Part shown: positions 3,547-17,146 of the stretch, in pieces
Position numbering within the stretch: position 1 is the stretch's first letter
Layout of the letters: the number at the start of each line of letters is the position of its first letter
Virus record (IMG/VR): IMGVR_UViG_3300046003_007892
Location: 124,001-188,000 of that record
Direction: 5' to 3' (one strand)
DNA length: 64,000 nt
Translations under genes and position numbers: made by a program
Notes under the pieces: generated by a model
The model's input: only the letters and a program-made list of their open reading frames with translations
Database searches by the model: none
What the model was told of the DNA's origin: nothing

Positions 3547-4752
3547 CTAGGACGGGTCATTATCCCGTGGTTGAAAGTTTTCAGCCGTAAGCCACCCAGT
3601 ATCGACCATTTCTTGCTCAGATTTGTCGCTTTCGTGAACGGCGGCGACAATTTCTTCCAGGAGGTGAGGATTGTTTTCCAGGATGGTAAGCACCTGTTCC
3701 TTGGCCGATACTGAACTTTCTTCGGCAACTGTGGACTGAATTTCCGGCTCAGCTTCGGGTGTGTCCGCTACCGTATCGTCTTGACTCGCCAGAGCTTCTT
3801 TGGCAGCGATTTCAAAAATCGATGGTTCCTGGAGGAATGCCGATAGGCGTTCGTTCGGTGCCGGGACGAGTGGGATGACATCCTCGTAGGAAACCGGTCG
3901 TTCATCTTCCGGGATGAAGTCGTCCTCTGGGGAATCTTCTTCGATGACATCGGTCTCGCTGAGGTCTTCCTCGACTGGTTCCTGAACGGCTTCCACGACC
4001 ACCGGCTTCGGTTGGCGAGAACGTGACCATTCTCCAAGCGTGATCGTGCCTGAGATCATCAGGACGATAGCCAGAGGGTCGAAGGCGAACATCAGTGTTC
4101 CGATGACGGCTTGAACGGCTGCCGTGGGGTCTTTGAAGCCCATGGTGGTCAGGGGGCCCAGCTTGGCGGTGGCGGCGTTGGCCTGACTCCGCAAAGGTGC
4201 CATCTCGACGTTCTTGGCGGTGATCTGCGCGTTCAGGGCGGCGATCTCTCTGGAGATGCGATCACGGTCCCGGCGTTGTTGGCTCATGAACGTCGTTGCG
4301 CCCCTGGCCGAGCCGCCCGCAAGATAGGTGTCCACGGTCTTGTTGATGTTGGCTTGCTGGCGTTCCAGTTCCGTCCGTTGGGCGAGCAACTGGTCAAGTT
4401 GAGCCTGATGACTTTCAACCTGCATCGTGATCTCGGCCGCAGGCGCCTTCTGGTCGAGATGGGCCTTCATCAGATAGCCGTAGATGCCCAAGCTCGTGAT
4501 CAGCATCAGGGCGATGACCGCTGCGCAGAGGTAGAAGCGGTGGAACTTGCTGACGAGGGGGTTCTTCCAGTTGGAATGGACCCAACCCGCAGCGACGAGC
4601 TTGCTGACTTCGAGGACGACGCCCATGATGGCGACCGGCAAGAATGCAGCCGAGAACAAAGCAGCCAGTCCGACCACGCTGAAATAAGCCGCAACAGCGG
4701 AGATCGCCACGGCACAAAACAGGGTCAAGGACCCGACGAGAAGTTTTTGCAA
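3547..4752 (-). CDS. Membrane protein with coiled coil and acidic tail
   Basis: N-terminal hydrophobic helices, Q/E-rich heptads, further TM segment, D/E-rich C-terminus; start uncertain. Confidence 0.75.
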   Translation of the reverse strand: MQKLLVGSLTLFCAVAISAVAAYFSVVGLAALFSAAFLPVAIMGVVLEVSKLVAAGWVHSNWKNPLVSKFHRFYLCAAVIALMLITSLGIYGYLMKAHLDQKAPAAEITMQVESHQAQLDQLLAQRTELERQQANINKTVDTYLAGGSARGATTFMSQQRRDRDRISREIAALNAQITAKNVEMAPLRSQANAATAKLGPLTTMGFKDPTAAVQAVIGTLMFAFDPLAIVLMISGTITLGEWSRSRQPKPVVVEAVQEPVEEDLSETDVIEEDSPEDDFIPEDERPVSYEDVIPLVPAPNERLSAFLQEPSIFEIAAKEALASQDDTVADTPEAEPEIQSTVAEESSVSAKEQVLTILENNPHLLEEIVAAVHESDKSEQEMVDTGWLTAENFQPRDNDPS

Positions 4753-14551: not shown

Positions 14552-15124
14552 ATGTCTGCTCTGAACCTCAAGCCCACTTTCACCGACCGCGAATCCTACA
14601 AGGCCTGGATTGCCTCGTGGCGGGCCGCCTACCGCGAAATGTCCCAGGACATCCGCACGCGGAAATACAAGCTCAAGGACGCCCAGCGGGCCGAAGAGAG
14701 CAACGCCGGAACCCTTCAGGCCCAGCTTCGTCAGCACCGCCACATGGCGGCCAAGATGATGATGCTCCGTGAGGAGGCCACGCAGCGTCGTGACCGAATC
14801 CTGGGCATGCACAAAGCCCTGAAGGAACAGTTCGACTCGTTCCCGCTCGACCTCGGCACCTGCAAGAACGTCGATTTCCACTTCAACAAGGGTCACATCG
14901 AATTCCCCTTCCTGCCCATGTGGGCTCTGAAGGTGAAGGGCCAGACCTTCTACGTCCACAACATCGAGTCCGAGGCTCCGTGGAATACCCACGAGCGTTC
15001 CTCGGGTTCGACCAAGGGCGTGCTCCGCTTCAAGAAATGCAACATCGTGATCGATCAGTCCGGCACTGCTCGCATCACGGAGGCCGTCGATTTTTTCGTT
15101 GACGAAATGGCGGAGGCAGCATAG
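14552..15124 (+). CDS. Hypothetical protein
   Basis: AAAGGA SD; FHFNK...PMWALKVKGQTFYV...TKG; ends TAG GAG TAA. Confidence 0.8.
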   Translation: MSALNLKPTFTDRESYKAWIASWRAAYREMSQDIRTRKYKLKDAQRAEESNAGTLQAQLRQHRHMAAKMMMLREEATQRRDRILGMHKALKEQFDSFPLDLGTCKNVDFHFNKGHIEFPFLPMWALKVKGQTFYVHNIESEAPWNTHERSSGSTKGVLRFKKCNIVIDQSGTARITEAVDFFVDEMAEAA

Positions 15125-15417
15125 GAGTAAAGGACTGAGAGTGTCTTGGAGGCCGAGACCGCATTCTGGAACTAAGCGACTTCCCGCAAGGGACGCTCCA
15201 GATGCCCGAACGCTAGCCAAGTAGTCCTCCAAGCGGAGGCAAGAAGTGGGCGCACATCCTGCCGCACTCTCTAGACCCGGCGACGGGTCGAGGTAGAAGC
15301 TCTGAAGCACAAGGAAATCCTCTCGGGGATAGTGTGCCCTCGGAATTGGCGGCTCTTAGCGGGGTCGTCATGTAGCCGGGGAGGTATGGAGGTGAAAATC
15401 CCCCTGAGCATCTATTA
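15125..15417 (+). ncRNA. Unidentified ~290-nt structured RNA with predicted pseudoknot
   Basis: GNRA hairpins (tccc-GCAA-ggga, gacccg-GCGA-cgggtc, ggt-GAAA-atc); crossing helices 15131-36/15223-28 and 15137-44/15264-71; no plausible ORF. Confidence 0.7.
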
Positions 15418-15418
15418 C

Positions 15419-15487
15419 GCGCCCGAAAGGCCTATCCTGGGCTTCTAACCCCCAAGGGTGAGGTTTCGATTACCTCCGGGCGCACCA
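15419..15487 (+). tRNA. D-armless tRNA-like element; anticodon CUA by register (UCU alternative)
   Basis: Acceptor GCGCCCG/CGGGCGC+A+CCA; T arm GAGGT-TTCGATT-ACCTC; anticodon stem TGGG/CCCA; only 12 nt replace the D arm. Confidence 0.7.
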
Positions 15488-15494
15488 TTTTGAG

Positions 15495-15530
15495 GAAAGG
15501 CGGGGACCAGCGGGTCTCCGCCTTTCTTTC
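15495..15530 (+). terminator. Strong hairpin, probable terminator
   Basis: GAAAGGCGGGGACC-agcg-GGTCTCCGCCTTTC then TTTC. Confidence 0.75.
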
Positions 15531-15654
15531 ACAGGCTTCGGTGGCTTGGGAACCTGGGACCCAAGCGACTGTTGAGCCGCCATTGTCTTCGGAGGTGGCG
15601 GTGTGGGGGCGGTATGGATTTGGCGGCGCCGCTGGCCTGCCGTCCCCAACCAGC

Positions 15655-15730
15655 GCGTCGTTAGCTCAGATGGTAGAGCATCGGCTTCTAACACCGAGGG
15701 TCACGGGTTCGAGTCCCGTCCGACGCGCCA
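15655..15730 (+). tRNA. tRNA with CUA anticodon (amber suppressor candidate)
   Basis: 76 nt; D stem GCTC/GAGC; anticodon stem TCGG/CCGA with C31-A39 mismatch puts CTA at 34-36 (15688-15690); T arm ACGGG/CCCGT; G73, encoded CCA. Confidence 0.85.
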
Positions 15731-15783
15731 TTTCCTTTACAATAAATCTTGCCTTTGCTGCATTGCGATGGTATCCCTATTTT

Positions 15784-16371
15784 ATGCAAAATAGTAATGT
15801 CTCTTTGGTCCGAGCAGATGGCTCGCCCCGCATCCGCGTCAACCTGGACGTCGATGGCGTCATGTGTGATTTCGATGGCTGGTGCCGCACCAACTACGGT
15901 GGCGGCTCGCGCGAACTCTCGTTCGAAAACCCCGATGGCAGCATCCTGACTGGCGACGAAGCCCTGTGGGCCTATGTCGATCAGCACCCGGAGTTCTGGC
16001 TCGACATGCCGTTCTTCTACGGTGCCGACGAAATCATGGACATCTGCCGCCCCTACGGCGTCCGGTTCCTGACCGGCTGCCCGCGCGATGAGAATCGTTT
16101 CGCTCGCGCCTCGGCCGAAAAGGTCCAGAAACTGAACGGCAAGTTCCCCGGCATCGAAGTCGTCACGTGCTGGTCGAAGCACAAGATGCTCCACATGCAG
16201 GAGCCCGGCGACATCCTGGTCGATGATTTCATCGCCAACATTCGCCGCTGGGAAAAGGCGGGCGGCTGCGCGGTCTACTTCAAGACCCACAAGCAGGCCG
16301 TGTCCGATCTCCGTTCGGCTCTGGCTCGTCAGTTCCCCGACATCAAAGCGGGCGAGCGCGTCTGGGTGTGA
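15784..16371 (+). CDS. HAD-family 5'(3')-deoxyribonucleotidase-like
   Basis: NLDVDGVMCDF, FLTG, ILVDD...N...W..AGG. Confidence 0.88.
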   Translation: MQNSNVSLVRADGSPRIRVNLDVDGVMCDFDGWCRTNYGGGSRELSFENPDGSILTGDEALWAYVDQHPEFWLDMPFFYGADEIMDICRPYGVRFLTGCPRDENRFARASAEKVQKLNGKFPGIEVVTCWSKHKMLHMQEPGDILVDDFIANIRRWEKAGGCAVYFKTHKQAVSDLRSALARQFPDIKAGERVWV

Positions 16372-17055: not shown

Positions 17056-17146
17056 GCGAGGGTGCCAGAGCATTCAAATGGGCCGGACTGCAAATCCGGT
17101 GGAGCCAATAACTCCTACGAAGGTGCGAATCCTTCCCCTCGCTCCA
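17056..17146 (+). tRNA. tRNA-Cys(GCA) with long variable arm (class II / Tyr-like scaffold)
   Basis: Acceptor GCGAGGG/CCCTCGC, U73, CCA; CCGGA-CTGCAAA-TCCGG; V-arm GGAG-ccaataa-CTCC; T arm GAAGG-TGCGAAT-CCTTC. Confidence 0.88.

What the first reader, a model, noticed from the sequence alone, without database searches (positions are those of the whole stretch)
15125..15417. ~290-nt pseudoknotted RNA abutting the D-armless tRNA
Seen: three GNRA-capped hairpins on the plus strand; nested stems cttgg/ccaag and gcattctgga/tccagatgc; adjacent 5' strands AGGACT and GAGAGTGT pair with 15223-28 and 15264-71, a crossing topology reminiscent of the P7/P3 core of group I ribozymes but in permuted order; hairpin CCTCC/GGAGG competes with the AGGACT helix. 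It ends 1 nt before a tRNA-like 5' end, so RNase P cleavage would release it. I could not match it to a known class. Inference: a novel ribozyme, switch or tRNA-associated ncRNA.
Basis: partly seen in the sequence, partly recalled or inferred. Interest (0 to 1): 0.8.

Follow-up and report, generated by a model that had tools for sequence, protein, structure and literature searches.

The report
tRNA-like RNA beside phage suppressor tRNAs
The flagged 290 bases are not one knotted ribozyme: the last 125 bases are a conserved, tRNA-shaped but apparently non-chargeable RNA in a jumbo phage's suppressor-tRNA cluster, and the first 165 bases show no conservation and no more structure than chance would give.

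Summary
The window is part of a 240-kb Atu_ph07-like jumbo-phage contig. No Rfam family matches.

Only one distinct relative was found, a 2-kb Logan contig whose flanking protein is 65% identical. It conserves only 15292-15416, not the 5' 165 nt.

That 3' part is a cloverleaf:
- a closing acceptor-like helix;
- a 4-5 bp D-like stem whose AAGGAA loop carries an inserted hairpin;
- an anticodon-like arm, with a 24-nt hairpin insertion in the window;
- a conserved AGGUAU;
- a T-like arm with loop UGAAAAU next to the closing helix.

Unpaired columns are 75% identical and paired columns 49%. Pairing holds in 96% of cells, and 8 of 24 pairs changed on both sides.

A model built from the relative's copy finds the window copy (E about 1e-6); its next best hits are real tRNAs. 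The element has no encoded CCA and lacks U55/C56, and it fails tRNA models.

Best reading: a tRNA-derived, non-decoding RNA, co-processed with the adjacent suppressor tRNAs. Its function is unknown and expression could not be tested.

The parts
15125..15291 (+). 5' half of the finding: a G+C-rich spacer or 3' UTR after the stop of the 190-aa gene.
   Evidence: No counterpart in L002 apart from about 35 nt right after the stop codon. Helix counts and the crossing topology are at chance level. MFE z is -2.4. There are no tRNA-like or Rfam hits.
15292..15416 (+). The tRNA-like cloverleaf element, which is the conserved core of the finding.
   Evidence: A covariance model built only from L002:1398-1485 hits 15298-15410 at 35.3 bits, E 1.9e-6. 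The MFE is a four-way junction. Of the paired cells, 95.7% are paired, and 8 of 24 pairs changed on both sides.
15292..15302 (+). 5' strand of the closing acceptor-like helix. It pairs with 15406-15416 as 4 bp, an A.A mismatch, then 6 bp.
   Evidence: MFE. The L002 equivalent is an exact 7-bp stem, GUCUUGG/CCAGGAC, of different sequence.
15307..15337 (+). D-like arm: stem GCACA/UGUGC, conserved loop AAGGAA (15311-15316), and an inserted hairpin at 15317-15330.
   Evidence: L002 has GCUCA/UGAGC, AAGGAA and a UUCG hairpin. The third stem pair is A-U in the window and U-A in L002.
15338..15381 (+). Anticodon-like arm: stem 15338-43/15376-81 with a 24-nt hairpin insertion (15347-15370) where L002 has the 7-nt loop UUUGGAG.
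   Evidence: CM alignment and MFE.
15382..15404 (+). Conserved AGGUAU followed by the T-like arm, GGAGG-UGAAAAU-CCCCC. The stem has one A.C mismatch and lies 1 nt from the 3' strand of the closing helix.
   Evidence: This is the best-conserved block: 26 of 32 nt identical to L002 1445-1476. The T-stem has two pairs changed on both sides.
15406..15416 (+). 3' strand of the closing helix. It is not followed by CCA.
   Evidence: By contrast, 35 of the 40 phage tRNAs aligned carry an encoded CCA.
15419..15487 (+). D-arm-deleted tRNA(CUA) with an encoded CCA. It is context, not part of the element.
   Evidence: Phage-tRNA model R2 scores it 47.2 bits, E 7e-12, with the D arm skipped. ARAGORN calls it at a lowered threshold. 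Its 3' 51 nt are 71% identical to the canonical tRNA(CUA).
15495..15526 (+). A 14-bp G+C-rich hairpin followed by a U-rich stretch, possibly a terminator or processing hairpin.
   Evidence: Inverted repeat I3. The simple terminator scan did not flag it.
15655..15730 (+). Canonical suppressor tRNA(CUA) directly upstream of the NT5C-like gene.
   Evidence: ARAGORN and Rfam, 57.7 bits; R2, 83.5 bits. The same position is occupied in relatives L105-L107.

Best explanation
The finding is two different things.

(1) Positions 15125-15291 are an unconserved G+C-rich spacer. Its helices, including the 'pseudoknot', are what chance gives.

(2) Positions 15292-15416 are a tRNA-derived cloverleaf RNA that has been kept under selection. 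It has a closing acceptor-like helix, a D-like arm with an AAGGAA loop and an inserted hairpin, an expendable anticodon-like arm, a conserved AGGUAU linker, and a T-like arm with the loop UGAAAAU.

The conserved letters sit where a tRNA builds its elbow and core. The anticodon region and the acceptor sequence are free to change, and there is no encoded CCA. I therefore infer that it is not a decoding tRNA but a tRNA-shaped module.

The proposed mechanism is inferred, not shown. The element is transcribed with the neighbouring suppressor tRNAs. RNase P cutting at the 5' end of the tRNA(CUA) derivative 2 nt downstream would define its 3' end. It would then either persist as a small stable tRNA-like RNA, as T4 RNAC and RNAD do in the T4 tRNA cluster, or serve as a processing or punctuation element that separates the upstream mRNA from the tRNAs.
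For: Context:
- The window is a jumbo-phage contig with a translation island: a class II aaRS, PTH2, NT5C and tRNAs.

Homology and structure:
- L002 shares the element.
- The L002 copy alone folds by MFE into an exact cloverleaf: 7-bp acceptor, 2 nt, D arm, anticodon arm, then a 5-bp/7-nt T arm abutting the acceptor, z -2.2.
- ARAGORN at a lowered threshold also calls it tRNA-like.
- Model R1, built from L002 only, finds the window copy at 35.3 bits, E 1.9e-6. Its next best hits are real tRNAs aligned end to end.
- The independent phage-tRNA model R2 aligns the L002 copy in the same register at 10.9 bits.

Conservation pattern:
- 95.7% of cells are paired and 8 of 24 pairs changed on both sides. 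Slid controls give at most 1 such pair.
- Unpaired columns are 27/36 identical; paired columns are 23/47 identical. The orthologous real tRNA(CUA) pair is 50/77 identical.

Arrangement:
- The 2-nt spacing to the next tRNA equals the 1-6 nt spacing of tandem tRNA(CUA) pairs in relatives.

Precedent:
Against: - Only two distinct sequences exist, so the covariation rests on one comparison, and alignment A5 was fitted to the model structure.
- The window copy is the more degenerate one. It has an A.C mismatch in the T-stem, an A.A mismatch in the closing helix and a 24-nt insertion, and the phage-tRNA model does not detect it.
- Closer and more distant relatives lack the element altogether, so it is dispensable in the group.
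- No function is demonstrated.
Confidence: 0.6

Rival explanations
1. The element is a decaying tRNA pseudogene: a leftover of a tandem tRNA(CUA) duplication with no function, in a tRNA array that is turning over quickly.
For: - It has no CCA.
- It has lost U55, which is invariant, and C56, which is present in at least 90% of the 40 phage tRNAs.
- The window copy has mismatches and a 24-nt insertion.
- A D-arm-deleted tRNA(CUA) sits next door.
- The element is absent from other relatives.
- The array is rearranged between the window and L002.
Against: - The two phages are far apart: the flanking protein is 65% identical.
- Even so, the loops are 75% identical, while the stems are 49% identical and stay paired, with 8 pairs changed on both sides.
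- The derived features are shared by both copies: the D-loop hairpin, AGGUAU and UGAAAAU.
- The rest of the intergenic DNA cannot be aligned.
Confidence: 0.2
2. One reading: one pseudoknotted RNA of about 290 nt, a new ribozyme or riboswitch with a permuted group-I-like P3/P7 core, released by RNase P.
For: - The helices exist as described.
- The 5' half has a modest MFE z of -2.4.
- It adjoins a tRNA 5' end.
Against: - 99.7% of shuffles contain crossing helices of this size, and helix counts equal the shuffle means.
- The 5' half has no homologue, and the only relative lacks it.
- There is no Rfam hit to any intron, ribozyme or riboswitch family at E<=10.
- The MFE fold does not use the AGGACU helix.
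Confidence: 0.04
3. The element is a working but highly unusual tRNA. The L002 loop UUUGGAG would read as anticodon UGG. The window copy would need its 24-nt insert removed as an intron, and CCA would be added after transcription.
For: - L002 has a 7-bp acceptor, a 5-bp T-stem with a 7-nt loop, and a 7-nt anticodon-like loop with U33 and A37.
- This phage group carries other odd tRNAs: a 46-nt insert in L005, non-7-nt CUA loops, and a 91-nt tRNA-Cys with a G55 T-loop.
Against: - The anticodon-like loop is not conserved between the two copies.
- There is no encoded CCA, although 35 of the 40 phage tRNAs aligned have one.
- U8, U55 and C56 are missing.
- In the window the closing helix runs 4 bp beyond a 7-bp acceptor.
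- It is below threshold in Rfam tRNA and scores only 10.9 bits or nothing in R2.
Confidence: 0.07
4. Part of the 5' half encodes a short peptide. AAGGA is followed by GUG at 15141, giving 27 codons up to the TAG at 15222. The apparent structure there would then be incidental.
For: - The about 35 nt after the upstream stop are 69% identical to L002.
- Read in that frame, they give similar first residues, VSWRPRP against LRWRARP, with two synonymous differences. This is my own reading.
Against: - The similarity covers only 7 codons, after which the two sequences diverge completely.
- No protein evidence exists.
- High-G+C DNA produces many spurious ORFs.
Confidence: 0.05

Closest known systems
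Transfer RNA (Rfam RF00005), in particular the tandem suppressor tRNA(CUA) genes of related jumbo phages
   Same: - Cloverleaf topology.
- In L002, a 7-bp acceptor, a 2-nt link and a GCUC/GAGC D-stem.
- A 5-bp T-stem with a 7-nt loop that starts with U and has A at position 58, lying next to the acceptor strand.
- The position in a tRNA array, 2 nt from the next tRNA, as in the tandem pairs of relatives.
   Different: - No encoded CCA.
- A at position 8.
- T-loop UGAAAAU instead of UUCRAnU, so U55 and C56 are missing.
- A hairpin inserted in the D-loop.
- The anticodon loop is not conserved and is interrupted in the window.
- It fails the Rfam tRNA model and scores 10.9 bits or nothing with the phage-tRNA model.
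Phage T4 RNAC and RNAD (species 1 and 2 RNAs), small stable RNAs from the T4 tRNA gene cluster
   Same: A non-tRNA small RNA gene embedded in a phage tRNA cluster, with function unknown (PMC3014915, PMC9697503).
   Different: - No sequence relation was tested or is expected.
- T4 RNAC and RNAD are shown to be expressed, whereas expression here is untested.
- Whether they share the tRNA-like fold is not established here.
Viral and cellular tRNA-like processing modules: murine gammaherpesvirus 68 vtRNAs, and MALAT1 mascRNA (Rfam RF01684). This comparison rests on my own knowledge.
   Same: tRNA-shaped, non-aminoacylated elements whose role is to recruit RNase P or RNase Z and so define the ends of neighbouring RNAs.
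   Different: - Those are eukaryotic systems.
- There is no Rfam match here beyond a sub-threshold hit on a real tRNA.
- Processing of the present element is only inferred.
T-loop-containing modules: the cobalamin riboswitch L4 'GGUGAAAAUCC'-type loop and the RNase P J11/12 region. This is a resemblance recalled from memory.
   Same: The hairpin loop GGUGAAAAUCC preceded by purine-rich AGG motifs looks like the T-loop hairpins of those RNAs.
   Different: There is no Rfam match to Cobalamin, AdoCbl or any RNase P family at E<=10. The surrounding architecture is a cloverleaf, not those folds.

Membership tests
tRNA (RF00005) | Score at or above the family threshold in a tRNA covariance model | tested here: not met
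   There is no RF00005 hit on window 15292-15416 or L002 1398-1485, even at E<=10. Phage-tRNA model R2 gives 10.9 bits for L002 and no hit for the window.
tRNA (RF00005) | Cloverleaf with a 7-bp acceptor and a 5-bp/7-nt T arm stacked on it | tested here: met
   This is the exact MFE fold for L002. The window has the same four-way junction, but with an 11-position closing helix, one A.A mismatch and one A.C mismatch.
tRNA (RF00005) | Elbow nucleotides G18 and G19 with U55 and C56, plus U8 | tested here: not met
   The T-loop is UGAAAAU and position 8 is A. U55 is invariant and C56 is present in at least 90% of the 40 tRNAs of this phage group.
tRNA (RF00005) | 7-nt anticodon loop with U33, and a 3' CCA end | tested here: not met
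   L002 has UUUGGAG, but the window has 8 nt plus a 24-nt hairpin. Neither copy has CCA after the closing helix.
Group I intron (RF00028) | Conserved P3-P8 core with the P7 G-binding site; a covariance-model match | tested here: not met
   No hit at the gathering threshold or at E<=10. The crossing helices are expected by chance and are not conserved.
tmRNA, including permuted forms (RF00023, RF01849-51) | tRNA-like domain plus a tag reading frame; ARAGORN or Rfam detection | tested here: not met
   ARAGORN finds no tmRNA. The only RF00023 hit is 6.6 bits at 15605-15651, outside the region.
RNase P RNA and the cobalamin riboswitch | Covariance-model match to RF00010, RF00011, RF00373, RF00174 or RF01482 | tested here: not met
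   No hits at E<=10 on 14900-15800 or on 15280-15500.
Stable non-tRNA RNAs of phage tRNA clusters (T4 RNAC/RNAD type) | Expressed as a discrete stable RNA, processed from the tRNA-cluster transcript | not testable with these tools
Location within a tRNA cluster is met.

The most novel reading that the evidence does not exclude
The element could be a new class of phage ncRNA built on a tRNA scaffold. It would have a re-engineered elbow (AAGGAA, AGGUAU, UGAAAAU) and free expansion sites, and it would act in suppressor-tRNA biology. Possible roles include binding the phage aaRS, the conserved 190-aa protein that accompanies tRNA(CUA) genes, RNase P or a host tRNA-directed defence factor, and so controlling when TAG is read through.
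Probability: 0.12. Interest if true: 0.6.

Novelty: new variant of a known kind. Interest (0 to 1): 0.3.

Why it matters
If the element is expressed, it adds a case where a phage keeps a tRNA-shaped RNA that cannot decode, next to the suppressor tRNAs that jumbo phages use for stop-codon readthrough. It shows which parts of the tRNA fold (elbow and core) are kept when decoding is given up, and it gives a handle on how such tRNA arrays are processed. It is rare, being seen in two phage lineages only, and it is not the new ribozyme class that was proposed.

Tried and rejected
Known RNA families:
- Rfam at the gathering threshold and at E<=10 on three stretches gave no family.

Searches for more homologues:
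- blastn against the phage collection gave only tRNA hits and a protein-level hit to Sinorhizobium phage Phosso.
- Exact-motif scans of viral contigs found only the source contig and chance hits. Scans of metagenome and genome contigs found only chance hits. Models R1 and R3 confirmed no further member.
- My scans allowed a gap of at most 70 nt, so the window copy, whose gap is 74 nt, was itself excluded.
- L021 has the same 21-nt motif but was selected by that motif. It lacks the D arm and any tRNA context, so I did not count it.
- Synteny walks used relatives of the 190-aa protein and of NT5C. Only L002 carries the element.
- L084-L087 are the same phage, 100% identical over 901 nt, so they add no variation.

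Other ideas tested:
- A tRNA remnant in the 5' half: none found with R1 or R2 with filters off.
- The MAFFT pairwise alignments A1 and A3 were structurally wrong, so I replaced them with a CM-based alignment.
- ARAGORN's alternative reading of L002 as a long-variable-arm tRNA was rejected because its D and anticodon stems do not pair in the window copy.
- RNase P-like and cobalamin-like motif resemblances were rejected for lack of any model match.
- The promoter and terminator scan found nothing.
- Function of the 190-aa neighbour: the AlphaFold model is confident, but there is no PDB fold match.
- TAG recoding inside the window: no clear in-frame TAG in ORFs with high GC3.

Full report
**Context**

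The window is positions about 120,001-184,000 of IMG/VR contig IMGVR_UViG_3300046003_007892, which is 240 kb long. The nearest cultured relatives at protein level are the Rhizobiales jumbo phages Phosso and Atu_ph07.

The finding lies in a translation-related island:
- a 190-aa conserved protein of unknown function, ending at 15124;
- the flagged region;
- a D-arm-deleted tRNA(CUA) at 15419-15487;
- a canonical tRNA(CUA) at 15655-15730;
- an NT5C-like nucleotidase;
- a 91-nt tRNA-Cys(GCA);
- a class II aaRS and a PTH2 hydrolase.

**The observation**

The region ends 2 nt before the tRNA-like 5' end at 15419.

None of this exceeds chance:
- The whole region folds with z = -1.6, the 5' half with z = -2.4, and the 3' half with z about -1.4 to -2.1.
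- Dinucleotide shuffles contain on average 9.0 helices of at least 6 WC pairs (10 observed) and 8.0 helices of at least 8 WC/GU pairs (8 observed).
- 99.7% of the shuffles contain a crossing pair of such helices.
- The MFE fold does not use the AGGACU helix.

Rfam gives nothing in the region at the gathering threshold or at E<=10.

**Comparative evidence**

The upstream protein has about 40 relatives. I followed them and the NT5C relatives into their contigs and into 51 IMG/VR loci.

- Four contigs are the same phage, with 901 nt 100% identical.
- Only one distinct relative has comparable intergenic content. This is L002, from Logan run SRR23083720, whose flanking protein is 65% identical.
- Against L002, the first about 35 nt after the stop codon and a block at 15371-15402 align. 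The block is GCCGGnnAGGTATnnnGGTGAAAATCCC, with 26 of 32 nt identical.
- The 5' domain, roughly 15160-15290, has no counterpart.
- In other relatives the two flanking genes are separated only by an odd or normal tRNA(CUA).

**What the conserved part is**

L002:1398-1485 folds by MFE, with no input from me, into an exact cloverleaf (z -2.2):
- a 7-bp acceptor, GUCUUGG/CCAGGAC;
- AA;
- D-stem GCUC(A)/(U)GAGC, with loop AAGGAA followed by an inserted UUCG hairpin;
- AG;
- a 4-bp stem with the 7-nt loop UUUGGAG;
- AAAGGUAU;
- T arm UCGGG-UGAAAAU-CCCGG, directly abutting the acceptor 3' strand.

ARAGORN at a lowered threshold also reports it as tRNA-like.

The window has the same four-way junction at 15292-15416:
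- closing helix 15292-15302 with 15406-15416;
- D-like stem GCACA/UGUGC, with AAGGAA and a hairpin;
- stem 15338-43 with 15376-81, carrying a 24-nt hairpin insertion;
- AGGUAU;
- GGAGG-UGAAAAU-CCCCC.

Model searches agree:
- A covariance model made from L002 alone (R1) finds the window copy at 35.3 bits, E 1.9e-6, in 387 kb.
- Its next best hits are genuine tRNAs aligned end to end.
- An independent model of 40 tRNAs from this phage group (R2) aligns the L002 copy in the same register, though only at 10.9 bits.
- R2 scores the D-arm-deleted tRNA(CUA) at 47.2 bits.
- R2 finds nothing in the window element or in the 5' half.

**Is it under selection?**

On the model-based alignment, 95.7% of paired cells are standard pairs. 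Eight of 24 pairs are changed on both sides, whereas structures slid by 1-3 columns give at most 1.

Unpaired columns are 27/36 identical and paired columns 23/47 identical. The orthologous genuine tRNA(CUA) genes of the two phages are 50/77 identical, and the surrounding intergenic DNA cannot be aligned.

Conserved loops with covarying stems are the signature of a functional structured RNA. The caveat is that this rests on two sequences and on an alignment fitted to the model.

**Why it is not a tRNA**

- There is no encoded CCA, although 35 of the 40 phage tRNAs aligned carry one.
- Position 8 is A.
- The T-loop lacks U55, which is invariant in the 40 tRNAs, and C56, which is present in at least 90% of them.
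- The anticodon-like loop is not conserved and is interrupted in the window.
- Rfam's tRNA model does not reach E<=10.

**Mechanism (inferred)**

The conserved blocks are AAGCnCAAGGAA, AGGUAU and GGUGAAAAUCC. They occupy the D-loop, the variable region and the T-loop, which are the parts that build the tRNA core and elbow. The anticodon arm tolerates a 24-nt insertion, and the acceptor sequence is free to change.

This points to selection on shape rather than on decoding. The element lies 2 nt from the next tRNA, which matches the 1-6 nt spacing of tandem tRNA(CUA) pairs in relatives. It therefore probably arose from the first gene of such a pair and is processed with the array.

The element could persist as a stable tRNA-like RNA. 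In T4, RNAC and RNAD come from the tRNA region and have no known role (PMC3014915, PMC9697503). Alternatively it could serve as a processing signal.

**Attempts to enlarge the family**

All attempts failed:
- motif scans of viral, metagenome and genome collections;
- searches of all fetched loci with R1 and R3.

The element is therefore rare.

**Verdict**

The proposed 290-nt pseudoknotted ribozyme or switch is not supported. A smaller, real and modestly interesting feature remains: a conserved tRNA-derived cloverleaf RNA in a jumbo-phage suppressor-tRNA cluster. It is a new variant of a known kind.

Noticed in passing
window 15419-15487: A tRNA(CUA) with encoded CCA whose D arm is reduced to about 12 nt. 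It scores 47.2 bits with a model of this phage group's tRNAs, and its 3' 51 nt are 71% identical to the canonical tRNA(CUA) at 15655-15730. Its MFE fold (z -3.6) hides the CUA in a different hairpin arrangement, so its function as a suppressor is uncertain.
   Followed up: partly
window 14552-15124 (190-aa protein, family alignment A2); IMG/VR loci L032-L081: This protein family of unknown function, or its C-terminal domain of about 75 aa, has a tRNA with a CUA anticodon within 2.5 kb in 32 of 50 jumbo-phage loci. The AlphaFold model is confident (pLDDT 87; a long helical hairpin plus a beta domain) but has no PDB fold match. It may be a factor linked to suppressor tRNAs.
   Followed up: partly
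window 17056-17146; L016 4199-4289: A 91-nt tRNA-Cys(GCA) with a long variable arm, a 3-bp D-stem and an unusual T-loop (UGCGAAU or UGCAAAU, with G at position 55). tRNA-Cys(GCA) genes also accompany tRNA(CUA) in several related loci (L070, L075-L077, L080, L081).
   Followed up: no
L005 3632-3748: A tRNA-shaped gene with normal acceptor, D and T arms but a 46-nt insertion in the anticodon-loop region. ARAGORN in intron mode calls it tRNA-Arg(TCT). It lies just after the homologous 190-aa gene in a 570-kb contig.
   Followed up: no
L002 1588-1664; L033 3725-3800; L016 about 3579-3656: Suppressor-type tRNAs that carry CUA in anticodon loops that are not 7 nt long, or that have aberrant D arms. 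L002 1278-1351 is a tRNA-Lys(CUU)-like gene with a weak anticodon stem and no CCA. Odd tRNAs are common in this phage group.
   Followed up: no
window 15125-15160 versus L002 1160-1193: The about 35 nt after the stop codon of the 190-aa gene are 69% identical between the two phages. From an AAGGA plus GUG/UUG start they read as similar peptides, VSWRPRP against LRWRARP, and then diverge. This could be a short ORF, a conserved 3' UTR element, or chance.
   Followed up: partly
window 15143-15159: The hairpin GUCUUGG-AGG-CCGAGAC nearly repeats the two strands of the acceptor stem of the L002 element (GUCUUGG/CCAGGAC), as if it were an empty copy of that stem. The match is not significant (8.3 bits, E 0.07).
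   Followed up: partly
window 15495-15526 and 15530-15654: A 14-bp G+C-rich hairpin followed by a U-rich tail lies right after the D-arm-deleted tRNA. The 125-nt spacer before the canonical tRNA contains GGCGGTATGGATTTGG, which echoes the element's AGGTATGGAGGTG.
   Followed up: no
L021 2204-2267 (minus strand; metagenome contig Ga0172381_10005745): An unrelated-looking leader downstream of a TATAAT-like box carries the same AGGTATnnGGGTGAAAATCCC motif and scores 22-23 bits with the element models. It has no D arm and no tRNAs nearby. Because it was picked by the motif itself, the score is biased.
   Followed up: partly
L084-L087 (Logan SRR35488161, SRR35488121, SRR27419979; GCA_043533235.1): The same phage, with 901 nt around the finding 100% identical, is present in several independent public samples. 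These could serve as sources of expression data.
   Followed up: partly
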